Source: Octopus bimaculoides (taxonomy: Eukaryota). Taken from it: DNA of 34,099 nt. This document shows positions 11,536-34,099 of this stretch, in pieces. Numbering within the stretch: position 1 is the first letter of the stretch; each line of letters starts with the position of its first letter. The translations under genes and the position numbers were made by a program. Below the pieces are notes generated by a model. The model was not told the DNA's origin and made no database searches. It worked only from the letters and a program-made list of their open reading frames with translations. The stretch covers positions 187,693,617 through 187,727,715 of the forward strand of contig NC_068982.1 in assembly GCF_001194135.2 (NCBI RefSeq), read 5' to 3'.

Positions 11536-11720
11536 TTAATCTCTCTCTTTCAAGAGAGTTTCTATGTCATTCGCCAAACTAATTCCATTCAGGAATGTCT
11601 GGTGGTTACCATCGTAGTAATTAATGCAGACGTTGGTACACAATTTTGAGAGGCCATAATCAGACGGTAAAGCGAGAGAATCCGTTGGTTCCGTTTTGAT
11701 TCGTAATAAATGGATGCAAC
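11536..11720 (-). CDS. Terminal coding exon, 185 nt: TE catalytic His (CIHLLRIKT...SDYGLSKLCTNVCINYYDGNHQTFLNG...LLKERD-stop)
   Basis: Acceptor aattactttttcag; TAA at 11538-11536; DYGLSKLC...DGNHQTFL resembles FASN DYNLSQVC...EGDHRTLL. Confidence 0.93.
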
Positions 11721-14700
11721 CTGAAAAAGTAATTTTAGAACTAATTTGTTCAAAAGCAATTAAGGTATCAAAATAATTTTTAATTTTGATTTCAAATTTT
11801 TTGTGCAAGGCCAGCAGTTTCTGGGGGAGAGGGTAAGCCGATTACATCGGACCCCGGAGTTAAATTGTTACTCATCTTATCGATCCCGAAAGGATGAAAG
11901 GCAAAGTCGGTCTTAGCAGAATTTGAACTCAGAACGGGCGAAATACCGCTAAGCATTTTGCCTGGCGTGTTAACCGTAACATAATTGTTACAGCTAAGAA
12001 CGGGGTCGATGTAATCGAATGATTTCTTTCTTCGTAATTGCTGGCATTGTGCCAAAACTTGAGATCAATATTAAAGAACGAAAAAAATAGAAGCAAAAAG
12101 CTGGAGGTAAAGGGAGGTAACTCTGGATTATACAGTAAATGATTAAAAATTTTGTTGAATAAGTCTGTTGTGTCTAGAAGAGAGCTTTTCTCTTTAGTAT
12201 CAGACGTTAGTTTGTTATTATTCCAGTCACATGTCGGACAATGTTTATATAAATATTATACCATGTCCAATAGTTGATCGGTATTTTATCAACCCTGGAT
12301 AGATGGAAAGCAAAATCGACATCAACGGGGATTTAAACCAGTGCTCCCCAACCATCCATCTGCCGGTCCCCACCACCTGACAGTCTTCCCTCGAGGAACT
12401 CGCACTTTGGTCACACGTTTACCGCAGTACGAAGTCAGGAGCATCCATTCTTCCTGACCTTATCGCCTTCCCTCTCGTAACGTATGTTGTAAATCTTTTC
12501 AATTCCTTGATACGCTTCTCTATGGCTTCTATCGGCGCAATCTCTATTTTTCTTGTGGCTCTCTTCATGGTTTTAAATGTTACCGTTCTTTTTAACACGT
12601 TGGCCGATAATTCTTCCGGTGGCGTTAGCTTCAGAATATTACCTTCCTTAGAGATTAATTTTTCACTTTCCTTCATCTTTCGAGGCTCCACCTTTATCTC
12701 GCGGACATCCAACTCTTGCACGTCTACTCCTCTGCTCGTTGCGGCCGCATTACTTGGACATCCCTCCTGCATCTTCTCTATTTCCCCCACAACGGGGGGG
12801 GGGGAACACAACAATTAACAAATTAACAACGTCAACAGTTCTAACATCAATTCAAATCAAATAACAATGGCAAGAATTCGATAAATATTTCAACATAAAC
12901 TCACGCATAAACTCAAACAGACGAACAACCGCTAAGCATTTCGTCCGGCGTGCCCACGTTTGTCAGCTCGCCGCCTTTTTCCTAGCAAATATTAACGACG
13001 TAAATGAAATGTTTACTACTGAGAACACACACACACATTTCTCTCTCACAAATACTGTTGTAATATGAAATACCAACCATGGTATTTTTTCCTGGGATCG
13101 TATTGATAACCCAAGTGGCAGTTCTGGATAAAGTCACGACATTTCTGTGCCCGAGAGATTCGTAAGACTTCTGTCGTCGTTGAGAACATTGGTTGTTGTT
13201 TCATTCGGAGTTTCGTATAAACCTTTAACCAGTTTTTCTTACCTGATGGAGGGCTACGACAAATGAAAGAAAATAACATTATAGAATGTTTAATATAATT
13301 GTGGAATATTACAGAAGCTAAACAACCATCACTGAAGTATATTGGGAAGAGGAAGATGACAACTACACACACACACTAACAGTTTGTGCCGGTCGCCGTC
13401 GAGACCTCGTGTGTTAATTGGAGTAACTGCGGCCAGTCTGAGAAATGAGCCGGGCCAAGTGGGGGCAGCTGCGACAGTGAGTGTCACTGGCCATTCTCTG
13501 CAGCAACGCCTTTGCAATCATGTCTGCGAGGCACGGCGAAACACGCCATTTGTTCTGGGATGTACAGCCCATTACCCCCACCCCATCTACTACCACTTTT
13601 TGTTTCCTTGGTGAAGTAATTTTGAAGGATTTTTTTTGCTCTTGTAACGACCGTGCGACAGGAGAGGTGACGAGGAATGGCACATCGCACGGTCGATACA
13701 AATAAAAATATGAAAAGGGGATAAATGAGTGCAAGTGCCAGAAGGAGAAGAGAGACATAACCGGGTAGAATGTTTAAGAGAAGATTTTATTTATATGTTT
13801 ACATGTTTGTGCGTCATATATACATAATAATAATAGACAGGCCGTCACGTATACATAATGCGTATGTGTGTGCATTAAGTACAGAGCATTGAAAGAGTCT
13901 ATAATATGACGTTAGAAGAATGTCCAGACACAAGGATGATAAATACCAGTTCATAGTCAAGGTGCACAGTAGTTGAAGTGCTGTATTAAAGGTGCAGCCG
14001 AAAGCTAGCTGTTATCTACTACGTCCGTATTTATGTATATATAACAAAGAGAGAGAAGTTTCCCTTAAGGGAGATAGATAAAAGTAAATACAATGATCTA
14101 CACAGAATCGATACAATTGATTATTATCCGGTCATGAAATTTAGCATTATGACAAAATAACTTTAATAAAAACTTGAAAATACGAGAAAAACCCAAAAGG
14201 TCAAGGGAGATAACTTTTATTATTTTAGTTTGGATCGTCTAACTTTAACTACAAACTGAACTATGAAAGAGAGACCAAGTCGATAAAAGGTGTCTATGTA
14301 GCAGATACATGTGCTGGAAATAGCAGCTAATCTCTCAAATCATAACTGGTCTTAAACGGAAAGATATAACATGTTGGATAATACAATCGGATATCTATAT
14401 ATTGGACAACAAAAGAGGAGATGGTTACGGCTCGGTCAGACCTATGAACTGCTACATTGAGAGGTTTACAGCGATGCTACGATGTTACTGTGATTAGAAT
14501 GTTACAGGAAACCATCACAAAACGGTTTCTTAAAGCTGAGCCAACTAGCAGGTGACCTCGGGTTTAACCAAGAACCCAATGGTTAGATAATGTCCGCAGT
14601 CTCAGATGGTCATGTTCAAGAATTCAACTGGACATTTAATGACTGTTGCTTCTGATAGGATTCTATGGAGGAGATGGTTGAGAATTCCACTCCCTCGTCT

Positions 14701-17700
14701 TTCCCCCAAAATAGTGGGCAAAGAAGACTAGAACAAGAAACAAGGGGCAGAACCCACTGCTTTTTCTGGCCCTTTAAGACGGCAGAAAAATAAAGTGACA
14801 GGTTTTAGAGGGATCATGCTCTAGGAAGGAAGGATTGGGTGTCATAATGTGATGTGGGGCATAGAGGTGGACAGCAGGGTGATGAGGAAGGAGGAGGCAA
14901 AATACCTGAATGTCTGAGTGGGAGGTGAAAGGAGTCTGGCTAGCTCTGAGGAGTAGAGGTCGTTATAGGATCAGGAGAAAAACAGAGGTGTCAGCAGACC
15001 TGTGGGCCGGGGGCAAGAGCAGGTCTTGGAGAGATACTAACTGGCATTCCGTATGTTTTGACAATGAGTGTTCCAGTTGATTTGATCTATGGAACAGCCC
15101 GTTCATAAAATTAACACGCAAGTGGCTGAGTACTCCAGACAAGTGTATCCTTAATGTAGTTTTTAGGGAGATTCAATGTGACACAGAATGAGACAAGGCT
15201 AACCCTTTGAAATAGGAGTACAACTTTTTTGCCAGCTGAGTGGATTGGAACAATGTGAAATAAAGTGGCTTGCTCAAGGACACAAGGCACTGCCAAGAAT
15301 CGAACTCGTGACCTTACAATTGTTAACCAAATACCCTAACCACTAAGCGACACATCACGGGAGATTTTATACCAATCAGTTCGGGGAACATATTTTGGAC
15401 CCAGTTTATGAAATGTGTGAAGTAACTACGTACCAGTTGCAAGAGTAACACTGAACTGTTGGGTCCAGTAACAATAGAATCTGTTTTTGTAAGGACAACA
15501 TTTTTATACTCTTTTACTCTCTTTTACTTGTTTCAGTCATTTGATTGTGGCCATGCTGGAGCACCACCTTTAGTCGAGCAAATCGACCCCAGGACTTATT
15601 CTTTGGAAGCCTAGTACTTATTCTATCGATCACTTTTTGCTGAACTGCTAAGTTACGGGGATGTAAACACACCAGCATTGGTTGTCAAGCGACGTTGGGG
15701 GAACAAACACAGGAACACAAACACACACGTATATATATATATATATATATATATATGACGGGCTTCATTCAGTTTCCGTCTACTAAATACGCTCACAAGG
15801 CTTCAGTTGAGGCTATAGTAGAAGACACTTGCCCAAGTTGCCACGCAGGGGGACTGAACCCGGAATCATGTGGTTGGTAAGCTAGCTACTTACTACACAG
15901 CCACTCCTACGCCTATAGGGTATTTTTTTTTTTTTTAAAGAAATCACTGTGCAATTTTTTTGTTTTTTTTGTGATTGCCCAAGGATGGGTGGCAAACTCG
16001 AGGATTTCCACTGATGCTTCAAGATTTTGATGATATGATTGGTTCTTTTTTGAAAGACATTATAAGGGAGGTGGAAAAATCCAGATCTGGCTGGTTTGAA
16101 CATAAAACAGGTAGAATATTTGAACCGGATATGACTGGTTTGAATGTTAAAGGATTAAACAAAAATAAAGCTTACCTCATTAAGGGTTTTCCAAATAAAT
16201 ACTTAACGGCCCACTCAAGTTTTGACTCAATGTCTTTTAGTTTCAATAAAGATGAGCGAATCAGTAATTTAGTGTCCTGACTAATTGACTTGTAATTACT
16301 AATGAAGCTCAGGATGAAGCCAATATCCAGGAACTCTTTGAACTGAAACAAAACAAATTACCATATTTGATGGCATATGAAACCCTTTTTCTTACCAAAA
16401 AATGTATTTAAAAAATTCTGAAATCTTAATGGAATATTAATCGTTAGAAGGACGGACCCTAACTGTATCTTCTGCCATTTTGCTCTTCTCTTCCAACCAT
16501 ATTACAGAAAATACTTCTTTAACTGGTTCAGAAGTACCAAAGTGACAAAGAATTTATTCAACTACTAACAGCATTTTACTAATAGGCATCTTTTTTTGGC
16601 AAGAGCATAAAAAAAAAAAAACAACTTTGCATTTTTCTTCATAATTAAAGTTCTGTGTTGCTTAAACTTCTGAGAAGACCAAAAGCTTTTTGCAATTAAC
16701 CTCATTATCATTGATAACAATATTGATTTCAAATACAGGGAGCGGCAGAAAAGTTGCCCCGATTTTGAAGGTTAAGAAAAAGCAAACAAATGAAGATACA
16801 AGAAAAAAAAACAATGCTCTCCACTCCGAACCATGGTGGGTATTACCGGAAACAGAAGAAAAAATGGCATTTAATGAACTTCATAGAAATACAGTTGATG
16901 GCACACATGACATTTTTTTCCCCATAAAAAAATATCTCTGCATACAGGACCCAAGGGGAATTTACAAAGTTGGGCCTTATATATTACAGGTTTTAATGCA
17001 TTAAAAGCTTTTATTCTTGAATATGGGCTGCTGGAATTGGCATGCATTGCCATTATATATGGTACCTCGAATTAATGTTTTACAAGTGTTTTATGTTAAT
17101 TATTTAATTAATCTTTTGTGACCCTACTCCTTATGAAGTACATAGTCTATGAATTTCAGGTCTACGCCCATGGCATATGGCGTAGTGGTTAAGTGCATGG
17201 GCTACTAACCCCAAGATTCTGAGCTTGATTCCAGGCAGTGACCTGAATAAATAATATCAAAAAATACGTTAGGAATCAGAACCCAGGTTTTAAATTTCCT
17301 CAAGACACCTGAAGAAGGCTGGAGGGTGTATCAGCCAAAGCGTTGTGTTAACAATAAACAAGATGAAATAAACAAATGTAAATAATGTACGTATTTCAGT
17401 TTGAAAATAATCAAACATTTGGTTTGATTTAATAAAATAGCTTTGTCGCTACTAAAACAGTGTTCTTAGGTAAAATTATAATGGAAGGTTGTAATTTAAG
17501 TCAAAATACAAGGTGCGGCAGAAAGGTCGCCCTGATTTCAAAGATTAATAAAAAGCAAATACATGAAGAGGCAAGCAAAAACTTTGTATTTCTATGAAGT
17601 TCATTAAATGCCATTTTTTCTGCTGTTTCTGGTAAAACCCACATCGTATTTTCTTGTATCTTCATTTGTTTGCTTTTTATTAACCTTTGAAATTGGGACA

Positions 17701-19618
17701 ACTTTTCTGTCGCACCCTGTATTTGAAATCAATATTGTTATCAATAATCATCGTTTAACGTCCACCTTCCATGCTAGCATGGGTTGGACGATTTGAGTGA
17801 GGACTGGTGAACGAGATGGCTGCACCAGACTCCAATCTGGTCTGGCAGAGTTTCTACAGCTGGATGCCCTTCCTAAGGCCAACCACTCCAAGAGTGAAGT
17901 GGGTGCTTTTATGTGCCACCGGCACGAGGATCAGAGTGGCGGTACTGGCAATGGCCATGCTCAAAAGGGTGTATTTTGCATGCCAACTGCACAGGAGCCA
18001 GTTCAGCGGCACTGGCAACGACCTTGCTTAAATGTTTTGTTCACATGCCACCGGCACAAGTGCCAGTAAGGTGACGCTGGTAACGATTACACACAAATGG
18101 TTTACTTTTAACGTGCCATCGGCACGGAAACCAGACAGCTGCTCTGGCAATAATCATGCTCAGATGGTGCTGTTAGTGCTCCAATGGCACGGATGCCAGT
18201 CATTGAATTTGGTTCAATTACGAAATCAATATCGTTATCAATGATAATGATAGTTGTTTCTGCTATAGGCACAAGGACTGAAATTTACAGGTAAAGGGCT
18301 AGTCATTTACATCAACACCAGTGCTTAACTGGTACTTATTGACCCCGAGAGGATGAAAGGTAAAGTCAACCTCGACAGAGTTTGAACTCAGAGCAAAGAC
18401 AGATGAAATATCACTAGGCATTCTGCCCCGTGTACTTTGGGCCTTAATTATACCACCTTTCATCGTCTCAGGGTCAATAGGTACCAGTTAAGCACTGGTG
18501 TTGCTGTAACCGACAAGCCCCTTCCCCTTAAATTTCAGCCCTTGTGCCTACAGCAGAAACAACTATCATTATCATTGGTAACAATATTGCCTTATGGCAA
18601 AGTGGCAGCAACATTGGTGCGGCGGACAAAATGCCACGTATTATTTCTTCTGGTTTATCGTTTCCAAATCCCTCTGAGTTCCACCTGGCCTTTCATCTTC
18701 TCGGGGTTGAAGAGTATCGATCAATTACTCTCAAAATTTCTGAAACTTAGAAATGAAGAGAGTAGGTGAGGGGATTCCTGTAATGAGGTTCCTTAATCAT
18801 AATAACTATTTCTGCTATACGTACAAGGCCTGAAACTTTGGGGGGAAGGGTCTAGTCAATTACCTTGACCCTAGAGCATAACTGGTACTTATTCTATCAA
18901 ACCCAAAAGGATGAAAGGTAAAGCCAACCTCAATGGAATTTGAGCTCAGAATGTAAACATGGACGAAATACTTAGTATTTTGTTAAGTATACTCAAGATT
19001 CTGTCAGCTCGTTACCTTAATGATTAGCCTTCATAATGGTTTCAAATTTTGGCACAAAGCCAGCAATTTCTGAGATGTAAGTAAGTCAACTACATCAACC
19101 GCAGTGTACAACTGGTACTTATTTTATTGACCCCGACAGGATGAAAGACAAAGTTGACCTCAGCAGAATTGGAACTTGGAACTTAAAGACAGGCAAATCA
19201 TAATACTAATACTACTACTAATAATATGAAAACTTACCATTTTAGTTGAGCAATCCCTTGGCAATTCTCTGGTTATATAATTACAGTGAGAGTGGAAGTA
19301 TTGTGGAGAGCCATCTAACAGAATCAGGACCTCAACCTGTCAGACATTTTTAGAGTCATTATTTAGGGGATTAACTGGATTATAATTTAGGGTTTAATTC
19401 AAATTGCAATTTTAAAGTTACAAAAATAAAAAGAAACATTAAAAATTAGGTTACTTTTTAAACAAAAAAAATTGAAAATCAGGTTTGGCTATGTGGTAAG
19501 GACACGGTTCTAGGTTCAGTCCCACTGCATGGCACCTTGGGCAAGTGTCTTCTACTATAGCCTCAGGCCAGCCAAAGCCTTGTGAGTGGATTTGGTAGAC
19601 GGAAACTGTAAGAAGCCC

Positions 19619-19655
<37 letters not shown>

Positions 19656-22329: not shown

Positions 22330-22362
<33 letters not shown>

Positions 22363-25300: not shown

Positions 25301-28300
25301 GGAAAAGTCGAACTCGGAACATAGACGGGCAAAATTTCGTTAAGCATTCTGCTAGCTCGCTGCCTTACGAAAGCTAAGTGATATCAATTCAGAACAACAG
25401 AAATGAAGAATAGAGATCTTAGAATTATGGTAAACGTACCCGATACGAACTCAGTGTTTGCTTTATATTTTCCAAAAAATCCCAGCTCTTGTCAGCAAAT
25501 TTACTGACAAATTCTGAATTGTCTTCGAAAGATTCAAAGAAGTTTTGTATCTTAGTCAGTCTGACGGGGGTTTCAAATTCACCAGTATGCAACTGAGTGA
25601 ACAAAAGACTCTGCTGCAGTGAATAGCCATCACAGAACTAAAAAAGAAAAAAAGAAGACAGCTGTTATGACAAGTGAGTAAATAGTATTGCAACAAAGAT
25701 TTCCTAGGACGGTACTATGAACAGAGTTAGAGCATTAGTGACAACGGGAGGGAAGGACAAGTGGGCTGGCAACAACAGGAAGGTGAGAGGGTTCTAGCGG
25801 CAAATGGAAGCAGTGCTGGCGGCACACTGGAGGGGCGCAGGCAGCACACTGGAGGGGGCGCAGGTGGCACACTGGAGGGGGCGCAGGTGGCACACTGGAG
25901 GGAGCACAGGCGGCAAACTGGAGGGGGCACAGGCGGCAAACTGGAGGGGGCACAGGCGGCACACTAGAGGGGTGGAGCCAGTGCAGGTGCTTTTTACGTG
26001 ATGCCAGCACCAGTGAGGTTACCAACTAGNNNNNNNNNNNNNNNNNNNNNNNNNNNNNNNNNNNNNNNNNNNNNNNNNNNNNNNNNNNNNNNNNNNNNNN
26101 NNNNNNNNNNNNNNNNNNNNNNNNNNNNNNNNNNNNNNNNNNNNNNNNNNNNNNNNNNNNNNNNNNNNNNNNNNNNNNNNNNNNNNNNNNNNNNNNNNNN
26201 NNNNNNNNNNNNNNNNNNNNNNNNNNNNNNNNNNNNNNNNNNNNNNNNNNNNNNNNNNNNNNNNNNNNNNNNNNNNNNNNNNNNNNNNNNNNNNNNNNNN
26301 NNNNNNNNNNNNNNNNNNNNNNNNNNNNNNNNNNNNNNNNNNNNNNNNNNNNNNNNNNNNNNNNNNNNNNNNNNNNNNNNNNNNNNNNNNNNNNNNNNNN
26401 NNNNNNNNNNNNNNNNNNNNNNTTTTAAAACGAAACCAAATATTAAGATCGTCGTCGTTCAACGTTCGTTTTCGATGCTGGCATGGAAAATAATATTTAT
26501 TTTGTATATTCTTTTACTTGTTCCAGTCATTTGGCCGCGGCCATGCTGGAGCACCGCCTTTAGTCGAACAAATCGATCCCAGGACATTCTTTGTTAGCCT
26601 AGTACTTATTCTACAGGTGCCTTTTGCCGAACCGCTAAGTTACGGGGATGTAAACACACCAACATCGGTTGTCAAGCGATGGTGAAGTGGGGGACAAACA
26701 CAGACATTATATATATAAACGATGGGCTTCTTTCAGTTTCCGTCTATTAAATCCATTCACAAGGCTTCTGTCGACCCGAAGCTATAGTAATAGTAGAAGA
26801 CACTTGCCTAAGGTGACACGCAGTGGGACTGAACTTGAAATCTTATCACAACCACTGCTGCGCCTTTTTTTTTTGTTTTTAATTAGAAAGTCTTTGATCA
26901 GATTCTCCAAATGACACCATGAACAGTTCAAGATAACATTTCTGATCATATAAACCACTTCGAATGCTATTTTAGAAAGTTTAAAGCGACTTTTTTTTTG
27001 TGTGCCGTAAACCATTTACCATTTCTATGGCTTCCCTCTCCCTGAATGCTCTAAGCACGAGCTTATTTTACTTCGTTGTTGGAGCTGTTTGAACCAGTGC
27101 ACACTGCGTTTGCCGTCAGAATGTTCGTTCATCTGCAAATTGCAGAGTCTTTTTTGCTTCTTTGTTTGTCACACTCTGTACGAGACCAGTAATGCATTCT
27201 GAACTGTTGATAGAAATCTCATAACAAATTGGTCCGTACAAAGTCGGCACTTGTAACGGTGATGATAATGAGGAGGAGGAGGAGGACTACTACACATCTG
27301 TTACATTTAGTTCTTTTACACCGGAACTTAAAATCACGTTTCTTTCAGCCTTTGCATTAATAATACATAAATGCCTTCAGCGGTTACCAAACATTTACTC
27401 GTCCTCTAGCACAGAAGAATATTAATGATTTTTAAAAAAAACTGACGCTTCTGTTCAAGGCTTCCACTATACTTTACAGAAACTAGGTGATCGCCTACGG
27501 GGTTAAAACCGGAGACGGTGGAGGGCTGTATAGATTTTAAACAGCTTTAAATTTCTTAATCTAACTCAGAATACTGAATTTCATTAAGAGAGCAAAAAGC
27601 AGGGATGTCACTGCCCACATCCCTGAACAGAGGAGGATAGAAGATGGGGTAAGGGTAGGGTGGAAAAGACGAGAGGATCACGTGGTTTTATGACATGTCA
27701 CATGATTTTGTGTGAAACATTAGAGATTTCATCAGATAACATTTATGCAGTGACATGTCGTTTTGTTAAAACTATAGACTTCTTGTGTGAAAGTTAATTT
27801 TACAAAACCAATTTCTCAGCTGATGCAAAGGTGATGATGCTGGGAGGAAGGGTTAGAGAAATATTAAAGAAGACGCATGAAGCAGGGCTGAGAGAAGTGG
27901 GGAGCATTTTGTTTGGCCGGGAGAAGAGAGGACACACTGCATAACGGGAGAAAGTGGGAAACATTGTAAAGGGGAGGGAAAAAGGAAGGGGCCATCATTG
28001 GACTGGGAAAACAGGTGGGGTGGGGGGAGAGCACATCGCAGAACTGGATGGGAGAACAGGGGAGCAGACGGTTGGCAGACGGAGTGGGGAGCACACTGTG
28101 CGATGGGAGACAAGGGGAGGACATCTTTTTATCGCTCACTTGTTTCAGTCATTGGATTGCAGCCATACTGGGGCACCACTTCAAAGGGGTTTAGTAGAAC
28201 AGATCAATCCCAGAGCGTATTGTTTTAAAAGCGGGATTCTTATTCTATTGGTCCTTTTGATGAACCGCTAAGTTAATGGGATGTAAACGAACACCAGTTG

Positions 28301-31300
28301 TCAAGTGGTAGGAGAAACAGAAATATGAAGACACACGCAGACAACGGACTTTTTCTGAGTTATCAGCCAAATTCACACACAAAGCATTGGTTGACCAAAG
28401 GCTATCGTAGGGGCTGCAAAGTAAGACAGAGTCCAAAACCGCGCAGTTGCAAAGCGAACATCTAAACCATACTCACGGCCACTAATATAGCCGGAGTGTG
28501 TGCCGCCGGAGGCAGCCCTTCCACTTGCCACCCCCCACAAAAAATTTTGCCTACAGCAGACCCAAAAGTGCTGCCTGGGGCGAACCGCCCCTACCAGCTA
28601 CGCCAGTACTCACGACTGACAAGAATTTAAAAATGTCAAAAATACCTGAAAAGACTTGGCGTTTAGAATTCTGTTTACCAATTCTGAATGTAAAGCGGAA
28701 TCATTTTGTTTCAAGAACTCAAAGACAGCACCGAAAGGTTCTGTGACATGAAGGGTGAGGTTTCTTAGAAACGCACTCATACCAATATATTCAGATGGAT
28801 CTGGAATTCCTAAGAGGACAAGTTTTCCATTGTCTGCGAGAGTGATGAAGGCATTATTGATATCTGAAGGGAGAAAGAGCAAATTATATATATATATATA
28901 TATGTGTGCGTGTGTTTTCAATAACAACTATGTTAAGATAAATATCGGTTATGTTGACAATACCAATGTTGTTGTCAAGAATAAACACACAAGAATCTGT
29001 AGCTATTCATAGTAATTACATGAAAAATAAAACTTACGTCGACATCAGAGCTTACGCTTCTGCACCGACGCACAGATACGCACACAGCCGCTGCGCCGAC
29101 GCCAATCGTAATAAACTGAGCCACGGTTTAAGTTCACCATTCAAAAAGAAAAAAAGTATAGTAATCCCTCGCCGTATTGCGGTTTATTGTTCAAGCTTAT
29201 GTCGTTTCCTCTGTGGTGTTGTTTTGCGTTTATAATAAACTAACACTGTTTTTACATCACGGATTTTCACCTATCGCAAGGATTTTTGGAGCGTAACATC
29301 CGCGATAGCCGAGGGATTACTGTACAAGTTTCCACAACCTTTATTTATCAAATGGATGTGTTATAAAACTATTCTGCACATACAATAACAGCCATACCGA
29401 CACTCCAACACATCTCCATCATCGGCTGCCCCACGGATATCACTATGGTTTCGATACTCGGACAGTACCATTCAATACCTTAGCTATCACCACATTCATT
29501 GAATCTTAATTCTAGGAAGAATTAAAGACTAACGTTAATTAAACTACAACAAAGAAACACATTTACCCTGTGGACAAAAATAGCATCGGTAAATTAATAA
29601 TTCTATAAGTAGATCTATAACTCCTAAATTATCTAACTAAATAGCAACCTCTCCACCTATAAAGCTGTGGCGGTCACGAAGCCACGACACAGGACACCCA
29701 CCCGGTAGTATGATTGAATTCGAAACCACGAAACGGCAAAGCGAACTTCTTCAAAGAAGAGCCATGTTTGTCTCCCATTTTATTATTATAATATCGATTA
29801 GGAAGAAACTTACCAGTTCCAGATGTAATGGCAGCATCGCAACCCAAGCCTTTCGTCAAAGACAATATTTTATTATTCAAGTACAAGCCCCAGACAGATG
29901 AAACACCAGGGAACATCTCTTCCAAATCACTGCTGTGTTCCAGGCTCCAAGACGATACGTAAATGTGTTTGCAGAAAGCGGATGCCATTTCAATAAGAAA
30001 CAGACACAGCACGTCTAGAACGAAATTAAGACAAATAAGCTATAGAAAGTCTGTTTAGAAGAGTTTTAAGATTACTCTGTATCTGTAAAAAGAGGTGGTA
30101 TTGAGAATGATCAATGATCCATGAAGTCATCTGAAGAGGATTACTGAGTGCTCTTCGGAGTAATGGAGTGGTTTGATGTAAACTGATGAGGTTGAGGGGA
30201 GGCTCAAAGGGATATAATCGTTAGCAAAAAATGAATGGGAAGATTAATGACCCGCCACCCCTACAGGTACCTGGTGATTAGAAACGAGATCACGAGGCTG
30301 CAATCAATAAGGAAATATATAATAGAGTCATGAGGCGACACAAATGAAATGAACAATGATTCTAACATCCTTGATAAATTTCTAGTCTCACAAAAACCGC
30401 GTAAAGCCTTTGATTGCTTTAAACCCCATACAAATCTGGTCCCCTCAACTTTCAGCTTTTTGTTTTGATTGACAAAATATCTGCCTTCTTAGACCAGTGG
30501 TTCTCAACCGGGGTTCATATAAGATTCTGGAGGGTCCACGCAAGCAAAATAGTAAATTGGGAATCTACAGACGTATTTCAAGGGTCGATGAAAAAAAAAA
30601 TTGCTTTCGATGTATTAGTTGCAAGAAACATAAGCTTCTTTCTCTAACGCTTAACAGAGTTCAACATGTTATTTCTTTATCGCCCCCAAGGGGCTAAACA
30701 TAGAAGGGACAAACAAGGACAGACAAAGGGATTAAGACGATTACATCGACCCCAATGCGTAACTGCTACTTATTTAATCGACTCCGAAAGGATGAAAGGC
30801 AAAGTCGAGCTCGGCGGAATTTGAACTCAGAACGTAACGGCAGACGAAATACCGCTAAGCATTTCGCCCGGCGTACAAACGCCTCTGCCAGCTCGCCGCC
30901 TTGAGTTCAATATGTTTCTGACCCCTGAAACATTCTCCCAGAGAATTCTATTGAAAAACTACACAAGTGAATGGGTGACAAACAAAATAGGAATTTTGAA
31001 AGAAGGATATATAAAACTGTCTTTTTCAGCATTGAATGGTTACGGGGTCTACCGGAACAAATAGTAATCCAAGGGGTCTAGAAGTGAAAATATAACTGAG
31101 AACAGCTGTTTTAGACTGCATAAATACCAGTAATTAGTTTGTACTGACTGAAAGGTGGATGAATCAACAGAGTCTGTCCTGGCTGCAACTGAAGGACTCT
31201 GTGAAGCAGATGATACGAAATAAGGTACGGGAGGACCTTCGTCAAGTCACTTTGTTCGATTTGTCGATCGGCTTCAATAAATCGAGTGTAAAAACGTTCA

Positions 31301-33522
31301 TCTAACAAAAAAGAAAAAAAATGTAAATAATATATTTAATAAATCAAATTCGTTTGTCTTAAATATTCTAGGAAAATAACTATGGAACCAGAAATGCAGG
31401 CATACCTCAACTTACGTCGGTTTTTGGAGAAAAGTTCAGCAACCAATCACCGACGTAACACGAAAAGTCATTAAAACAAATTTATTAGCTCATATCGATT
31501 TTAATGAATGGTTTTGAAANNNNNNNNNNNNNNNNNNNNNNNNNNNNNNNNNNNNNNNNNNNNNNNNNNNNNNNNNNNNNNNNNNNNNNNNNNNNNNNNN
31601 NNNNNNNNNNNNNNNNNNNNNNNNNNNNNNNNNNNNNNNNNNNNNNNNNNNNNNNNNNNNNNNNNNNNNNNNNNNNNNNNNNNNNNNNNNNNNNNNNNNN
31701 NNNNNNNNNNNNNNNNNNNNNNNNNNNNNNNNNNNNNNNNNNNNNNNNNNNNNNNNNNNNNNNNNNNNNNNNNNNNNNNNNNNNNNNNNNNNNNNNNNNN
31801 NNNNNNNNNNNNNNNNNNNNNNNNNNNNNNNNNNNNNNNNNNNNNNNNNNNNNNNNNNNNNNNNNNNNNNNNNNNNNNNNNNNNNNNNNNNNNNNNNNNN
31901 NNNNNNNNNNNNNNNNNNNNNNNNNNNNNNNNNNNNNNNNNNNNNNNNNNNNNNNNNNNNNNNNNNNNNNNNNNNNNNNNNNNNNNNNNNNNNNNNNNNN
32001 NNNNNNNNNNNNNNNNNNNNNNNNNNNNNNNNNNNNNNNNNNNNNNNNNNNNNNNNNNNNNNNNNNNNNNNNNNNNNNNNNNNNNNNNNNNNNNNNNNNN
32101 NNNNNNNNNNNNNNNNNNNNNNNNNNNNNNNNNNNNNNNNNNNNNNNNNNNNNNNNNNTTTTTTTCTTTTATTGTTCAAGCATTGAATACCTACAAACCA
32201 ATAATGGAAACAATTTTATTTTTAGATGCGCATATAAGGATATACATAATCGTGGCACTCCGTCGGTTACGACGACGAAGGTTCCAGTTAATCCGATCAA
32301 CGGAACAGCCTGCTCGTGAAATTAACGTGCAAGTGGCTGAGCACTCCACAGACACGTGTACCTTTAACGTAGTACCCCGGAGAGATTCAGAGTGACGCAT
32401 AGTGTGACAAGGTTGGCCTTTTGAAATACATGTAGTACTCTGTTCATACTTTGCAAAAGAACCTTCTGGAATTCGCTCTGTCGATATTTCCCTCAAGACG
32501 CACTTTGTCTTTCAAATTTTGGTACAAAGCCGGCAATTTTGAGAAGGGAAAGTCGATTACATCGATGCCAGTTATCGACCCCGAAAGAATAAAAGGTGTA
32601 GTTAACCTCAGAGCCATTTGAACGTAAAGAGCCGGAAGAACTGTTAAGCGTTTTGTTCTGCTAATGATTTTGTAAGATTGTTTCCTTAAGCCTTTAACAT
32701 TCAAACCAGTCACACTAAGTTCAAATATCCTCCTAGTTTTATGTTTAAGTTGGCCAGATCTGGCCTCTTACACTCAGCCTATAATGTCTTTAAATATAAG
32801 CAATCACATAATCGAAATTTCAAAGCTATGGAAATAATACATGCTTAACCCTTTCGCATTCAAACTGGCTATATCTGGCCAAAATATATAACCTGTTTTA
32901 TGCTCAGACTGACCAGACCTGGCCTCTCGCCTCAACCCCACAGTCTCATTCTAAAACTGAATAATCACATCATCGAAATCTCCAAACTTCAAGATAATAC
33001 ATAATTCAAAACAATAAAGATAAACAAACACCGTTTTGAATTAACCCTTTAGCATTCAGATTACCGTCAAACATAATGTGAATAAATCAGCTTTACATTT
33101 GACAGAGAAATCTGTATGCTTTCGGGCTAATATCAATGAAATTCAATCTGAGCCACATTGAACCACAATGAACCGCTTTGATCCGGCTTGTGGGGGGTGG
33201 GTGGAGAATATACAAAGGCCAACGCAGCAGCTGCTTCCCTTCTTGTTAAGCGGGTACAACGGGTAGAAAAGTGGGTAAAACGGGTAGAAAATAGCTGTGT
33301 GTGCCTTACCTAAGACCAGTGAGATACCAATGTTGGCCTTCCCTGTTACAGAATGGAATCCAGAATATATTAATACGGTGGCGTGTGTTTGTTTGGAGAT
33401 ATCATAGACCAACATATTCTGAACAAATAAGTCTTCATGTTTGGGAGATTCCACATCCTTCAGATAAAGCACAACAGGGGGCGGACTGAATTGTAACACC
33501 AGACCTCCAGACTGACAAATAC
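11536..33522 (-). CDS. Multi-exon FASN/animal FAS-like PKS-related gene, 5'-partial: pseudo-ER + Ser/Pro linker + thioesterase. join(complement) 33310-33522, 31128-31301, 29814-30014, 28646-28863, 25440-25637, 24802-25174, 21431-21536, 20625-20745, 19238-19336, 16176-16342, 13078-13253, 11536-11720
   Basis: Hand-spliced. All introns are GT-AG; phases 1,1,1,0,0,1,2,0,0,2,1 agree at each junction; 2231 nt with no internal stop. FASN-like motifs: QPGQTLLIH, LTKGLGCDAAI, IGMSAFLRNLTLH (ER); PLFIVHPVTG, GPYRLAGYSFGACVAFEM, LILLDGSP, YDPRKKYHG, DGNHQTFL (TE). Confidence 0.9.
12419..12814 (-). pseudogene. Lys/Glu-rich ORF, probable retroelement gag/ORF1 remnant inside the last intron
   Basis: 131 open codons, more GC-rich than the flanks, no splice pattern fitting the host gene; identity is inference only. 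Confidence 0.3.
13078..13253 (-). CDS. Exon, 176 nt, phase 2-1: TE (PPSGKKNWLK...FIQNCHLGYQYDPRKKYH)
   Basis: Acceptor ttttctttcatttgtcgtag; donor CATG|gttggt; YQYDPRKKYHG resembles FASN EQYTPKAKYHG. Internal structure uncertain (possible 72-nt intron). Confidence 0.82.
15085..15352 (-). mobile_element. tRNA-headed SINE-like element joined to an aaattaacgtgcaagtggctgagcactcc module
   Basis: Minus-strand head cttagtggttagg...gagttcgattc; module also at ~32250-32440(+) and ~9050-9185(-); fragment at ~21000-21150. Confidence 0.65.
15508..15914 (-). mobile_element. tRNA-derived SINE, family B (head aggcgtaggagtggctgtgt..., internal TA/TG microsatellite, tail gaaacaagtaaaagag), full length
   Basis: tRNA-like A/B boxes in the head (B box ggttcagtccc); same modules in several other copies in the window. 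Confidence 0.85.
16176..16342 (-). CDS. Exon, 167 nt, phase 0-2: TE lid subdomain (FKEFLDIGFILSF...LLKLKDIESKLEWAVKYLFGKPLM)
   Basis: Acceptor ttgttttgtttcag; donor AG|gtaagc; LLKLKDIESKLEWAVKYL resembles FASN LLPLKGLEERVAAAVDLI. Confidence 0.88.
17171..17390 (+). mobile_element. tRNA-headed SINE-like element with a Penelope-type tail carrying a degenerate hammerhead motif
   Basis: A box TGGCGTAGTGG at 17178-17188; degenerate B box gagcttgattcc at 17221-17232; acac-CTGAAGA-a-ggctg...cagcc-aaagcgtt-gtgt at 17305-17348. Confidence 0.6.
17509..17719. mobile_element. Tc1/mariner-type MITE, 211 bp
   Basis: TIRs caaggtgcggcagaaag and cttttctgtcgcaccctg, TA on both sides; part of a larger inverted duplication with 16710-16893. 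Confidence 0.7.
19238..19336 (-). CDS. Exon, 99 nt, phase 0-0: TE catalytic Asp (VEVLILLDGSPQYFHSHCNYITRELPRDCSTKM)
   Basis: Acceptor tgtctgacag; donor ATG|gtaagt; LLDGSP matches FASN LFDGSP. Confidence 0.93.
20096..20560. mobile_element. Interspersed repeat family C (catcatcatcgtttaa...ggatgcccttcctaacgccaacc) with internal ~67-bp tandem units
   Basis: Homologous copies at ~17746-18230 and ~22990-23190 (opposite strand); ~3.4 tandem units at 20277-20500. Confidence 0.75.
20625..20745 (-). CDS. Exon, 121 nt, phase 2-0: TE nucleophile elbow (FYICIMEAANPCGPYRLAGYSFGACVAFEMALQLETSNKP); not in the ORF track in this frame
   Basis: Acceptor tattttcttcag; donor CCA|gtatgt; near-identical to FASN GPYRVAGYSYGACVAFEM. 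Confidence 0.95.
21431..21536 (-). CDS. Exon, 106 nt, phase 1-2: TE (NVHALKSLGQMLTMPCFGIRMTNKTPRNSVEDMA)
   Basis: Acceptor attattcttaaag; donor GA|gtaagt; resembles FASN [31 protein letters not shown]. Confidence 0.92.
21600..22577 (+). mobile_element. SINE family B copy whose internal microsatellite is spanned by an assembly gap
   Basis: Head ggagtggctgtgtggtaagtagcttgc; (TA)n, gap, (TG)n; tail gaaacaagtaaaagagtaaagagt. Other copies at ~2080-2400(-), 4826-5108(+), 8436-8870(+), 19482-19840(+), 22690-22980(-), 24451-24630(-), 26508-26872(-), 28130-28480(-). Confidence 0.85.
23482..23601. repeat. 29-bp GC-rich minisatellite (caacccccgtgccggcgccacctacagac), at least 4 copies, running into a gap
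   Basis: Units start at 23482 (variant), 23511, 23540, 23569. Confidence 0.95.
24802..25174 (-). CDS. Exon, 373 nt, phase 0-1: Ser/Pro-rich linker and TE start (KIFQSP...TLVPLNSLENGEKPLFIVHPVT)
   Basis: Acceptor ttatttatctttcag; donor ACAG|gttagt. LNSLENGEKPLFIVHP resembles FASN LNSVQSSERPLFLVHP. Confidence 0.88.
25440..25637 (-). CDS. Exon, 198 nt, phase 0-0: end of ER and start of linker (FCDGYSLQQSLLFTQLHTGEFETPVRL...FLENIKQTLSSYR); not in the ORF track
   Basis: Strong acceptor tcttctttttttcttttttag; donor CGG|gtacgt; 66 open codons. FTQLHTG falls 52 aa after NLTLH, versus 53 aa for FRYMAQG in human FASN. Confidence 0.75.
25818..25975. repeat. ~23-bp G-rich minisatellite (ggcacactggagggggcgcaggt), ~7 diverged copies
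   Basis: Direct inspection; abuts a family-C-like fragment and the 26030 gap. Confidence 0.85.
28646..28863 (-). CDS. Exon, 218 nt, phase 1-0: ER (INNAFITLADNGKLVLLGIPDPSEYIGMSAFLRNLTLH...ILNAKSFQ)
   Basis: Acceptor tcttctcccttcag-type pyrimidine tract ending cag at 28864; donor CAG|gtattt; an alternative donor TC|gtgagt would end the exon at 28614. IGMSAFLRNLTLH resembles FASN LGMAIFLKNVTFH. Confidence 0.85.
29159..29322. mobile_element. pogo/Tigger-type MITE, 164 bp
   Basis: TIRs tagtaatccctcg and cgagggattactg (12/13), TA on both sides; its internal motif gcgataggtgaaaatcc recurs at ~9850. Confidence 0.8.
29814..30014 (-). CDS. Exon, 201 nt, phase 1-1: ER (VLCLFLIEMASAFCKHIYV...ILSLTKGLGCDAAITSGT)
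   Basis: Acceptor ttctag; donor ACTG|gtaagt. LTKGLGCDAAI resembles FASN HTGGKGVDLVL. Confidence 0.85.
30495..31108. mobile_element. hAT (Charlie-like) non-autonomous DNA transposon with a nested SINE
   Basis: TIRs cagtggttctcaa and ctgagaacagctg (10/13); 8-bp TSD tcttagac (30487-30494) and ttttagac (31109-31116). Confidence 0.75.
30671..30902 (-). mobile_element. tRNA-derived SINE, family A (head aaggcggcgagctggcag), full length, with 14-bp TSD
   Basis: A-box-like tggcagaggcg and B-box gagttcaaattcc on the minus strand; flanks gagttcaacatgtt (30657-30670) and gagttcaatatgtt (30903-30916). Confidence 0.85.
31128..31301 (-). CDS. Exon, 174 nt, phase 1-1: ER (ERFYTRF...VLPYLISYHLLHRVLQLQPGQTLLIHPPFSQYKLIT)
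   Basis: Acceptor ttctttttttgttag; donor ACTG|gtattt. YHLLHRVLQLQPGQTLLIH resembles FASN YYALVVRGRVRPGETLLIH. Confidence 0.85.
32685..33070 (+). mobile_element. Tandem degenerate copies of a TTAACCC-terminated (piggyBac-like) repeat end
   Basis: Three (t)taaccctttagcattc-like starts at ~32687, 32845 and 33042 with similar downstream sequence; a related copy on the minus strand at ~16070-16157. Confidence 0.4.
33310..33522 (-). CDS. Exon, 213 nt, phase 1-1: N-terminal part of degenerate ER (ICQSGGLVLQFSPPP...VLIYSGFHSVTGKANIGISLVL)
   Basis: Acceptor ttttctttccag at 33523; donor TTAG|gtaagg at 33309; open frame; in phase with the next exon. Confidence 0.75.
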
Positions 33523-33952: not shown

Positions 33953-34099
33953 AAAGTTAGCCGTCATACGGCGACTGACAGCTTAAAGTTAGCCGTCATA
34001 CGGCGACTGACAGCTTAAAGTTAGCCGTCATACGGCGACTGACAGCTTAAAGTTAGCCGTCATACGGCGACTGACAGCTTAAAGTTAGCCGTCATACGG
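33953..34099. repeat. 32-bp minisatellite (aaagttagccgtcatacggcgactgacagctt), at least 4.6 identical copies, cut by the window end
   Basis: Units start at 33953, 33985, 34017, 34049, 34081. Confidence 0.95.

What the first reader, a model, noticed from the sequence alone, without database searches (positions are those of the whole stretch)
11536..33522. Intact FAS-like gene with rearranged architecture: pseudo-ER joined to TE, with KR and ACP missing
Seen: 12 exons give one stop-free frame, with ER homology ending at ...FTQLHTGEFETPVRL (exon 25440-25637) and TE homology starting at TLVPLNS (exon 24802-25174). Only ~140 aa separate them, with no GGxGGxG KR motif and no GxDSL phosphopantetheine site, and the intervening intron (25175-25439) has no gap. 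Established: animal FASN is KS-AT-DH-pseudoME-pseudoKR-ER-KR-ACP-TE, with roughly 370-380 aa between these points, and ACP is required for chain elongation. Molluscs and arthropods also have FAS-like PKSs (AFPKs) that make non-fatty-acid products. Inference: this is not a canonical synthase but a retained derivative, for example a trans-acting chain-release/editing partner of another FAS/PKS or a tethered acyl hydrolase. I cannot confirm from this window that it is undescribed.
Basis: partly seen in the sequence, partly recalled or inferred. Interest (0 to 1): 0.88.

Follow-up and report, generated by a model that had tools for sequence, protein, structure and literature searches.

The report
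Known carrier-less FAS-like octopus gene

Summary
Twelve minus-strand exons (33522..11536), all with AG/GT splice sites, give a stop-free 735-codon frame. A degenerate ER-like domain is followed after 141 aa by a FASN-type thioesterase (TE), with no KR or ACP. The junction exons lie in one gap-free contig. All four gaps are intronic, and gapless assemblies of Argonauta hians and Octopus sinensis show the same junctions.

The window is Octopus bimaculoides. The model equals residues 288-1022 of RefSeq XP_014775595.1 (LOC106872932). Upstream lie a KS, an AT-like domain (catalytic Ser to Gly) and a DH-like domain without its His.

Absence of KR and ACP (and of pseudo-ME and pseudo-KR) is an old family trait, not a local rearrangement. 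Gastropod and bivalve homologues of about 1,850-1,975 aa share it. One of them, Gigantopelta XP_041375027.1, is labelled 'clade4' by Lin et al. 2024 ('mo-clade 4 AFPK': only KS-AT-TE predictable, unknown biochemistry, present in cephalopods).

The gene is under purifying selection (dN/dS 0.24 against O. sinensis). O. sinensis and O. vulgaris have nevertheless lost the TE.

Most likely function (inferred): a synthase-dead scaffold carrying a flexibly tethered thioesterase that acts in trans. The finding is real and well read, but not novel.

The parts
33310..33522 (-). Exon 1 of the window's part of the gene. It holds the end of the DH-like domain (ICQSGGLVLQF...) and the start of the truncated ER-like domain. 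It begins in phase 1, so coding exons continue upstream of the window.
   Evidence: AG/GT sites and frame. Aligns to Argonauta P0001 residues 84-156. DH-end assignment from the mapping to canonical FASN and from the upstream sequence of P0045.
31149..31301 (-). Exon 2. ER-like domain up to ...LLIHPPF, where the NADPH-binding GxGGxG should begin. A second in-frame donor lies 21 nt downstream (31128).
   Evidence: 58% identity to Argonauta. Isoforms P0045 and P0191 differ here.
29814..30014 (-). Exon 3. ER-like Rossmann part. NVLCLFLIEMA replaces GSGGVGQAAIA of FASN.
28646..28863 (-). Exon 4. ER-like domain (…LADNGKLVLLGIPDPSEYIGMSAFLRNLTLH…).
   Evidence: Matches canonical FASN ER and the mo-clade 4 representative.
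25440..25637 (-). Exon 5. End of the ER-like homology (…FTQLHTGEFETPVRL, to about 25557), followed by a family-specific helical element (25556-25440).
   Evidence: AF2 predicts helices at residues 575-611 of P0045.
24802..25174 (-). Exon 6. About 100 aa of predicted disordered linker (25174 to about 24875), then the start of the TE (TLVPLNS…PLFIVHPVTG, from 24868).
   Evidence: pLDDT is below 35 for P0045 residues 612-714. No similarity to ACP or KR by hhalign.
21431..21536 (-). Exon 7. TE domain.
20625..20745 (-). Exon 8. TE nucleophile elbow GYSFG. The catalytic Ser codon TCA is at 20684-20682.
   Evidence: Pfam PF00975 on this exon alone, E 2.6e-11..
19238..19336 (-). Exon 9. TE domain. The catalytic Asp (LLDGS) codon GAT is at 19315-19313.
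16176..16342 (-). Exon 10. TE lid region.
13078..13253 (-). Exon 11. TE lid, including a family-specific insert (SPPSGKKNWLKVYTKLRMKQQ…). It is 176 nt, the same length as in Argonauta.
11536..11720 (-). Exon 12. TE C-terminus. The catalytic His (DGNHQTF) codon CAC is at 11604-11602. The TAA stop is at 11538-11536.
31520..32158 (.). Assembly gap, inside intron 1.
   Evidence: O. sinensis (gapless) has the same exon 1-exon 2 junction.
26030..26422 (.). Assembly gap, inside intron 4. A 23-bp minisatellite (25818-25972) lies beside it.
   Evidence: The O. sinensis and Argonauta junctions are identical.
23602..24450 (.). Assembly gap, inside intron 6. A 29-bp minisatellite (23483-23601) abuts it.
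   Evidence: The Argonauta intron 6 is 448 bp, gapless, with the same junction.
21787..22329 (.). Assembly gap, inside intron 6.

Best explanation
The finding covers the 3' two-thirds of Octopus bimaculoides gene LOC106872932 (XP_014775595.1). This is the octopus member of an ancient mollusc-wide family of fatty-acid-synthase-derived proteins, the 'mo-clade 4 AFPKs' of Lin et al. 2024.

Shown:
- The full gene reads KS, AT-like, DH-like, ER-like, disordered linker, TE.
- The segments that in FASN hold pseudo-ME plus pseudo-KR, and KR plus ACP, are absent in every member examined.
- The AT serine, the DH histidine and the ER NADPH motif are gone.
- The KS cysteine and the TE Ser/Asp/His triad are kept. 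In Octopus (seen in the O. vulgaris and O. sinensis orthologues) the first KS histidine is Asp.

Inferred mechanism: with no carrier domain, no loading transferase and no reductases, the protein cannot build an acyl chain by itself. Most likely it is a FAS-shaped scaffold with dead synthase centres. In O. bimaculoides it still carries an active FASN-type thioesterase on a flexible tether of about 100 residues. That thioesterase would hydrolyse acyl thioesters presented in trans, such as the acyl-ACP of the canonical FAS or acyl-CoA.
For: Identity:
- The exon model is 100% identical to P0045 = XP_014775595.1.
- The window matches GCA_001194135.2 chromosome CM046602.1 base for base.
- An exon at L003:9980-10249 spans the border with the adjacent KS-containing gene model, so the two models are one gene. 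An AT-like exon lies at L003:4244-4480.

Family:
- A HMMER search of 1.84 billion representatives with the Argonauta orthologue finds only 12 proteins at E<=1e-30. Apart from the last two of the twelve (one traced to a haptophyte alga, the other not traced; both match mainly over the TE part), they are Octopus, Haliotis, Gigantopelta, Patella, Pecten, Sinanodonta, Pinctada and Solemya proteins.
- Gigantopelta XP_041375027.1 is labelled 'clade4' in the paper's source data.
- Each octopus domain scores higher against these proteins than against canonical FASN: KS 348-387 vs 238-303 bits, TE 173-217 vs 92-149 bits, ER-like 85-124 vs 35-42 bits.
- The paper's own clade-4 representative has the same degenerate ER, then linker, then TE, with no KR or ACP.

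Architecture and motifs:
- Mapping to the canonical 2,513-aa FASN.
- Motif table.
- Pfam scans with a positive control.
- No KR, ACP, pseudo-ME or pseudo-KR by tblastn in four loci, two of them gapless.

Constraint:
- dN/dS is 0.24 over 426 codons against O. sinensis, Fisher p = 3e-9.
- Identity to Argonauta is 49.6% over 822 aa, with exon lengths and phases conserved.

Structure:
- The AF2 model has a confident ER-like domain (pLDDT 75-89) and TE (75-93) joined by a disordered segment at residues 612-714.
- The Foldseek top hits are human FASN TE (7mhd, TM 0.80, E 2e-21), followed by FAS/PKS modifying regions.
Against: - No biochemical or expression data for this gene were available here, so TE activity and trans action are inferred from conserved residues only.
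- O. sinensis and O. vulgaris carry a premature TAA in exon 6, and O. sinensis lacks exons 7-9. The upstream part is still constrained. The TE is therefore dispensable in close relatives, and the conserved role may be non-catalytic.
- Argonauta has Glu in place of the triad Asp.
- In gastropods and bivalves the KS Cys-His-His triad is intact. There the family may do real condensing chemistry with an external carrier, which a pure 'hydrolase on a dead scaffold' picture does not explain.
- Membership of mo-clade 4 was originally defined on KS phylogeny. The O. bimaculoides KS lies outside the window and was not examined.
Confidence: 0.55

Rival explanations
1. Non-catalytic pseudoenzyme. The conserved function sits in the KS-to-ER-like body, for example as a dimerisation partner or regulator of the canonical FAS, or as a lipid- or acyl-binding scaffold. 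The TE is vestigial in octopods.
For: - All catalytic centres except the TE are dead. The KS His1 is Asp in the O. vulgaris and O. sinensis orthologues.
- O. sinensis and O. vulgaris lost the TE, yet exons 1-6 evolve at dN/dS 0.24.
Against: - The TE triad, fold and open frame are retained in O. bimaculoides, and in Argonauta apart from Asp to Glu, despite about 50% overall divergence.
- The TE is kept in all gastropod and bivalve members.
- The dN/dS value averages two lineages and cannot show constraint in O. sinensis alone.
Confidence: 0.28
2. A working but unconventional condensing enzyme. KS and TE would act on CoA thioesters or on a carrier protein supplied in trans, making an unknown metabolite. 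This is the 'unknown biochemistry' of Lin et al.
For: - The KS Cys-His-His triad and the TE triad are conserved across gastropod and bivalve members.
- The family has been maintained across three mollusc classes.
- The paper files it with AFPKs.
Against: - In the Octopus orthologues examined the first KS His is Asp.
- The AT Ser is Gly in every member, so there is no obvious loading step.
- There is no ACP remnant.
Confidence: 0.12
3. A decaying pseudogene whose open frame survives by chance.
For: - Many catalytic residues are lost.
- The TE is lost in O. sinensis and O. vulgaris.
- Pfam barely sees the ER-like domain.
Against: - 735 codons over 12 exons have no stop, and all splice sites are canonical.
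- dN/dS is 0.24 with p = 3e-9, and intron identity (84-91%) is lower than exon identity (92-98%).
- Exon lengths and phases are conserved with Argonauta.
- The degenerate motifs are shared with gastropods and bivalves, so they are ancient rather than recent decay.
Confidence: 0.04
4. Assembly artefact. KR and ACP exons are hidden in the N gaps, or the contigs are mis-joined.
For: Four gaps lie within the gene, and the newer assembly has not closed them.
Against: - The ER-end and TE-start exons sit 265 bp apart in one gap-free contig.
- Gapless Argonauta and O. sinensis loci show the same junctions.
- There are no KR or ACP hits anywhere in the four loci.
- Gastropod and bivalve proteins have the same layout.
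Confidence: 0.01

Closest known systems
mo-clade 4 animal FAS-like PKSs (AFPKs) of molluscs (Lin, Li, Krug, Schmidt, Nat Commun 2024, PMC10764717)
   Same: - Only KS, a weak AT and TE are predictable.
- There is no KR or ACP. The ER-like domain lacks the NADPH motif and the AT Ser is Gly.
- A TE is present at the C-terminus.
- The family was reported from all mollusc classes, including cephalopods.
- A protein the authors labelled clade4 (Gigantopelta XP_041375027.1) is among the closest non-cephalopod homologues.
   Different: - The octopod proteins are shorter, about 1,700 aa by my estimate, against about 1,850-2,900.
- The Octopus orthologues examined have Asp for the first KS His.
- O. sinensis and O. 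vulgaris have lost the TE.
- Haliotis carries a PLAT insert that octopus lacks.
- The paper does not, in the text I read, spell out the absence of pseudo-ME/pseudo-KR or the dead AT and DH residues.
Canonical animal type I fatty acid synthase (FASN)
   Same: - Same domain order for the parts that remain: KS, AT, DH, ER, TE.
- Intron-rich gene.
- The TE is 30% identical to a canonical FASN (P0056) and structurally superposes on the human FASN TE at TM 0.80.
   Different: - FASN residues about 1095-1625 (pseudo-ME, pseudo-KR) and about 1869-2231 (KR, ACP) have no counterpart.
- The AT Ser, the DH His and the ER GxGGxG are lost.
AFPK mo-clades 1-3 (e.g. sacoglossan EcPKS1/EcPKS2)
   Same: FAS-derived, mollusc-specific paralogues of FASN.
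   Different: They keep KR and ACP and lack a TE. This gene is the reverse: it has a TE but no KR or ACP.
Stand-alone type II thioesterases that act on FAS in trans (e.g. vertebrate OLAH / thioesterase II; from my own knowledge, not tested here)
   Same: Proposed mode of action only: a Ser-Asp-His alpha/beta hydrolase releasing acyl chains from a carrier on another protein.
   Different: - OLAH is a free protein of about 30 kDa. Here the TE is the FASN-type C-terminal domain, tethered to a large pseudo-synthase body.
- No activity data exist for this gene.

Membership tests
mo-clade 4 AFPK (Lin et al. 2024) | Sequence relatedness to proteins that the authors placed in clade 4. The clade was defined on KS phylogeny and FAS-vs-PKS HMM scores. 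| tested here: met
   - The Argonauta orthologue retrieves Gigantopelta XP_041375027.1 (labelled clade4) at E 8.7e-55.
- The KS of the O. vulgaris orthologue and the ER-like domain and TE of O. bimaculoides all score higher against the clade-4-type gastropod and bivalve proteins than against canonical FASN.
- Caveat: the KS of O. bimaculoides itself lies outside the window, and no tree was built.
mo-clade 4 AFPK (Lin et al. 2024) | Domain predictors find only KS, AT and TE. No KR, ACP, ER or MT is predicted. | tested here: met
   - Pfam finds only TE in the window's protein.
- KS is found in the adjacent upstream model.
- KS plus a sub-threshold AT are found in O. vulgaris.
- The paper's representative shows the same pattern.
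mo-clade 4 AFPK (Lin et al. 2024) | C-terminal thioesterase present (unlike mo-clades 1-3). | tested here: met
   PF00975 scores E 1.3e-21 and the triad Ser508, Asp535, His714 of the model is intact.
Canonical animal FASN | Ketoreductase domain (GGxGGxG, PF08659) between ER and ACP. | tested here: not met
   No motif, no Pfam hit and no tblastn hit. The control FASN is detected.
Canonical animal FASN | Acyl carrier domain with a phosphopantetheine Ser (GxDSL, PF00550). | tested here: not met
   No motif, no Pfam hit and no tblastn hit. hhalign of the family linker against FASN ACP gives probability 0.1%.
Canonical animal FASN | Catalytically competent AT (GHSxG), DH (HxxxGxxxxP) and ER (GxGGxG). 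| tested here: not met
   The AT Ser is Gly, the DH His motif is absent and the ER glycine motif is absent, in all family members. For O. bimaculoides the AT-like exon is L003:4244-4480.
FASN-type thioesterase domain (alpha/beta hydrolase, PF00975) | Fold plus a Ser-Asp-His triad (GxSxG, xxDG, GxH). | tested here: met
   - Pfam E 1.3e-21.
- GYSFG, LLDGS and DGNHQ aligned with the FASN triad.
- AF2 pLDDT 75-93, and Foldseek 7mhd with TM 0.80.
- Activity itself is not testable here.
MDR-type enoyl reductase | Rossmann fold with an NADPH-binding glycine motif. | tested here: not met
   The fold-level homology is present: BLASTP E 2e-8, PDB PpsC ER E 1.5e-4, and Foldseek to FAS modifying regions. 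The glycine motif is replaced by PPFNVL and Pfam is below threshold. It is therefore a pseudo-ER.
Unitary pseudogene | Frame disruptions and neutral evolution (dN/dS about 1). | tested here: not met
   There are no stops or frameshifts. dN/dS is 0.24 with p = 3e-9.

The most novel reading that the evidence does not exclude
Octopods may show an enzyme-to-pseudoenzyme transition in progress. The protein is FAS-derived, and its AT, DH, ER and (in Octopus) KS centres are dead. The last intact centre, the TE, has been deleted in O. sinensis and O. vulgaris, while the remaining body stays under purifying selection. That would imply a conserved non-catalytic role, for example heterodimerising with or regulating the canonical FAS. 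At family level, it could instead point to a carrier-less condensing chemistry that has not been described.
Probability: 0.25. Interest if true: 0.6.

Novelty: already known. Interest (0 to 1): 0.3.

Why it matters
For the scan, this shows that a tool-free reading of raw sequence recovered a correct 12-exon gene model and a correct domain anomaly. The anomaly, however, is a published family trait and an annotated RefSeq gene, not a discovery.

Biologically, the family is still an open problem. It is a megasynthase-derived protein kept for hundreds of millions of years in molluscs without a carrier domain, a loading serine or any reductase, and its function is unknown.

Three details assembled here give concrete handles for anyone who wants to test whether it is a trans-acting hydrolase, an odd condensing enzyme or a pseudoenzyme:
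- the exact extent of what is missing relative to FASN;
- the universal Ser-to-Gly change in the AT domain;
- the His-to-Asp change in the Octopus KS, and TE loss in O. sinensis and O. vulgaris despite dN/dS of 0.24.

Tried and rejected
- Pfam on single exon ORFs found only the GxSxG exon. Domain calls needed the spliced protein.
- I first took the in-frame ORF upstream of the last exon (11721-11841) as coding, because it extends a FASN-TE alignment. I rejected it for two reasons. Exon 10 ends in phase 2 and only exon 13253-13078 fits. Argonauta also has a 176-nt exon of the same content and an acceptor at the same place as 11720. RefSeq agrees.
- By eye, the helical element after the ER-like domain looked like a degenerate ACP helix II. 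hhalign of the family linker against FASN ACP and KR-ACP alignments gave probability 0.1-0.2%, so I dropped the idea.
I used the Argonauta protein instead.
- I hoped the newer O. bimaculoides assembly would close the gaps, but it has the same gaps. Cross-species gapless loci were used instead.
- I looked for Octopus accessions in the supplements of Lin et al. and found none. Only the Gigantopelta accession is present.
- P0087, which I added as a third 'canonical FASN', is not a FASN. I ignored it.
- The second word-indexed homologue search, with P0045, returned only the three octopod proteins.

Full report
**1. What is in the window**

The window has seven N gaps, four of them inside the finding. 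The gene is on the minus strand. Six-frame ORFs and canonical splice sites gave a first set of exons. A first homologue search with a rough concatenation returned one strong hit. It is a 640-aa 'hypothetical protein, partial' of Argonauta hians (P0001, E 8e-121) whose only Pfam domain is Thioesterase. P0001 aligns collinearly with nine window exons at 40-66% identity and shows the same direct passage from the ER-like part to the TE.

The last three exons were fixed with the Argonauta locus L001. Its second gene model (177 aa) is the rest of the TE, and its middle exon is 176 nt. A window exon of exactly 176 nt (13253-13078) has the same content and the right phases.

The final model has 12 exons, all AG/GT, totalling 2,210 nt, 735 codons and a TAA stop at 11538-11536.

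**2. Checking the specific claim**

- Exon 25637-25440 and exon 25174-24802 are 265 bp apart in the gap-free stretch 24451-26029 and join in phase 0.
- There are 141 residues between '...FETPVRL' and 'TLVPLNS...'. The protein has no GGxGGxG, GxGxxG or GxDS[LIVM].
- Pfam on the spliced protein finds Thioesterase (E 1.3e-21). ADH_zinc_N appears only at E 0.29, and there is no KR or PP-binding hit.
- A canonical 2,513-aa FASN run with comparable settings shows KS, AT, DH, pseudo-KR, ADH_zinc_N, KR, PP-binding and TE.
- BLASTP against a canonical ER-KR-ACP-TE fragment aligns the ER part at 25% (E 2e-8), with HAGTGGVGQAAISIA opposite HPPFNVLCLFLIEMA. The TE aligns at 46%.

**3. The gaps**

All four gaps fall in introns 1, 4 and 6. 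The window is identical to part of chromosome CM046602.1 of GCA_001194135.2, which keeps the same gaps. The test therefore has to be comparative.

- Argonauta (L001, no N) has the ER-end and linker/TE exons 540 bp apart, and the next TE exon 448 bp further on.
- O. sinensis (L002, no N) has exons 1-6 with the same boundaries.
- tblastn with canonical pseudo-ME/pseudo-KR and KR-ACP segments finds nothing at E<=0.05 in the window, L001, L002 or L003.
- Minisatellites abut three of the gaps, which probably explains them.

**4. Identity**

A HMMER scan of 1.84 billion representatives with P0001 returned P0045, a 1,022-aa protein. P0045 contains my 735-aa model exactly, at residues 288-1022. It is XP_014775595.1, 'uncharacterized protein LOC106872932' of Octopus bimaculoides, which UniRef names oleoyl-ACP hydrolase.

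Orthologues are O. sinensis XP_036356706.1 and O. vulgaris CAI9716890.1 (1,401 aa), both named 'fatty acid synthase-like'. The O. vulgaris protein includes the KS and AT-like N-terminus.

In O. bimaculoides the upstream neighbour is a KS-containing model that ends where this one starts. An exon at L003:9980-10249 spans the border, and an AT-like exon lies at L003:4244-4480. It is therefore one gene split into two models.

**5. The family**

Most of the other strong hits are proteins of about 1,850-1,975 aa from Haliotis, Gigantopelta, Patella, Pecten and Sinanodonta, with shorter models from Pinctada (1,478 aa) and Solemya (779 aa).

Mapped onto canonical FASN, they and the octopus proteins keep KS (1-470), AT+DH (490-1095), ER (1625-1869) and TE (2231-2504). 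They have nothing for residues 1095-1625 (pseudo-ME, pseudo-KR) or 1869-2231 (KR, ACP).

Aligned motifs:

| Site | State in the family |
|---|---|
| KS Cys | kept |
| KS His1 | kept, except Asp in Octopus |
| KS His2 | kept |
| AT Ser | Gly in every member |
| DH HxxxGxxxxP | absent |
| ER GxGGxG | absent |
| TE Ser/Asp/His | kept (Glu for Asp in Argonauta) |

Pfam on the full-length members sees KS, a weak or absent AT, and TE. It never sees KR or PP-binding.

**6. Literature**

Lin et al. 2024 (PMC10764717) divide mollusc FAS-like proteins into clades. For 'mo-clade 4' they state that antiSMASH predicts no domain and InterPro predicts only KS-AT-TE. They also state that most of the sequence resembles nothing else ('as yet unknown biochemistry') and that the clade occurs in all mollusc classes surveyed, including cephalopods.

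Their representative (2,902 aa, Supplementary Data 11) has the same degenerate ER, then linker, then TE, and the same Pfam profile. Their source data label Gigantopelta XP_041375027.1 as clade4, and this protein is one of my top hits.

Domain by domain, the octopus protein scores higher against these proteins than against canonical FASN. I found no later paper that characterises the clade.

**7. Is it alive?**

Against O. sinensis, 426 codons of exons 1-6 give dS 0.162, dN 0.039 and omega 0.24. The ER-like part alone gives 0.21 and the linker 0.31. Fisher p is 3e-9. Introns are 84-91% identical, exons 92-98%. Against Argonauta the protein is 49.6% identical over 822 aa with 15 gap positions. 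This is purifying selection, not decay.

Unexpectedly, O. sinensis has GAA to TAA in exon 6 (…FADE*). It loses alignment at the 3' end of exon 6 and lacks exons 7-9 in an otherwise collinear region. Exon 10 survives as a relic. The O. vulgaris protein ends at the same residue. The TE is therefore lost in that lineage.

**8. Structure**

An AF2 model of P0045, built on an 11-sequence family alignment, has mean pLDDT 65.

| Region of P0045 | Assignment | Confidence |
|---|---|---|
| 130-300 | DH-like | pLDDT mostly 55-85, dipping to about 35 at 209-236 |
| 313-611 | ER-like, plus three short helices after it | pLDDT 75-89 in the core, lower towards the C-terminal helices |
| 612-714 | predicted disordered linker | pLDDT below 35 |
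| 715-1020 | TE | pLDDT 75-93 |

Foldseek's best matches are human FASN TE structures (7mhd, TM 0.80, E 2e-21). The next are the modifying regions of human FAS, a MAS-like PKS and insect FAS. A PDB sequence search agrees. The linker shows no profile similarity to ACP or KR.

**9. How it most likely works**

Shown: the protein has no carrier domain, no loading serine, no DH histidine and no NADPH sites. The TE triad is intact in O. bimaculoides, and a flexible tether joins the TE to the body.

Inferred: it cannot elongate a chain in cis. The simplest working model is a FAS-shaped, probably dimeric scaffold whose tethered TE hydrolyses acyl thioesters offered in trans.

The main rival is a non-catalytic role for the body. 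TE loss in O. sinensis and O. vulgaris, under continued constraint, supports this rival. A third possibility is real condensing chemistry with an external carrier. It fits the intact KS triad of gastropods and bivalves better than it fits Octopus, where His1 is Asp. Artefact and pseudogene readings are effectively excluded.

**10. Verdict**

The gene is annotated, and its family, including cephalopod members, was published in 2024. What remains open is the function.

Noticed in passing
L002 (O. sinensis) 46327-54772; window exons 6-10 for comparison: The O. sinensis orthologue has a premature TAA in exon 6 (…ITSFADE*). It has also lost the 3' end of exon 6 and exons 7-9, which hold the TE Ser and Asp, while exon 10 persists as a relic. 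The O. vulgaris protein ends at the same residue. The TE is therefore lost in that lineage although the upstream part has dN/dS 0.24.
   Followed up: yes
window 23483-23601, 25818-25972, 33953-34099: Minisatellites (29 bp x4.1, 23 bp x6.8, 32 bp x4.6) lie next to assembly gaps, including the 1,789-N gap just beyond the window end in L003. They probably explain why the assembly breaks in these introns.
   Followed up: partly
window 31128-31149 (exon 2 donor region): Two in-frame GT donors lie 21 nt apart. RefSeq isoforms use both, giving …HPPFN|VLCLF… or …HPPFSQYKLITD|VLCLF…. Argonauta matches the shorter form.
   Followed up: partly
window 11721-11841 (minus strand): An open frame continues upstream of the true last-exon acceptor and extends a weak FASN-TE alignment (YFDTLIAFEQ…). 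It is intronic in RefSeq and by phase logic, and it is a trap for exon calling by eye.
   Followed up: yes
P0047 (Haliotis rubra XP_046574357.1) residues 483-591: A PLAT/LH2 domain (Pfam E 6e-23) is inserted between the KS and the AT-like domain in the Haliotis family member. It is absent from the octopus, Gigantopelta and Pecten proteins. PLAT domains usually bind lipids or membranes.
   Followed up: partly
O. vulgaris P0195 residue ~300 and O. sinensis P0196 (KS domain, outside the window): The first catalytic His of the KS (EAHGTGT) is Asp in Octopus (VEADGTGI). All gastropod and bivalve members keep His. This was not checked in O. bimaculoides or Argonauta, because their KS exons lie outside the fetched loci.
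   Followed up: partly
proteins P0002, P0003, P0007-P0009, P0012, P0013 etc.: The first search returned a large set of stand-alone proteins of about 340 aa, closest to the FASN TE, with only PF00975. They come from 'ena' and Logan assemblies, with contigs up to 756 kb, and have many paralogues. Their source organism and role are unknown.
   Followed up: no
window 12422-12814 (minus strand, intron 11): A 131-aa open frame, Lys/Glu-rich, has no Pfam hit. It is not part of the RefSeq model and is probably repeat-derived.
   Followed up: no
window 30670-30902, 26507-26834, 15507-15937 and others: Interspersed repeats of about 230-430 bp occur in the introns and recur many times in the O. sinensis locus at 75-91% identity (SINE-like).
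   Followed up: no
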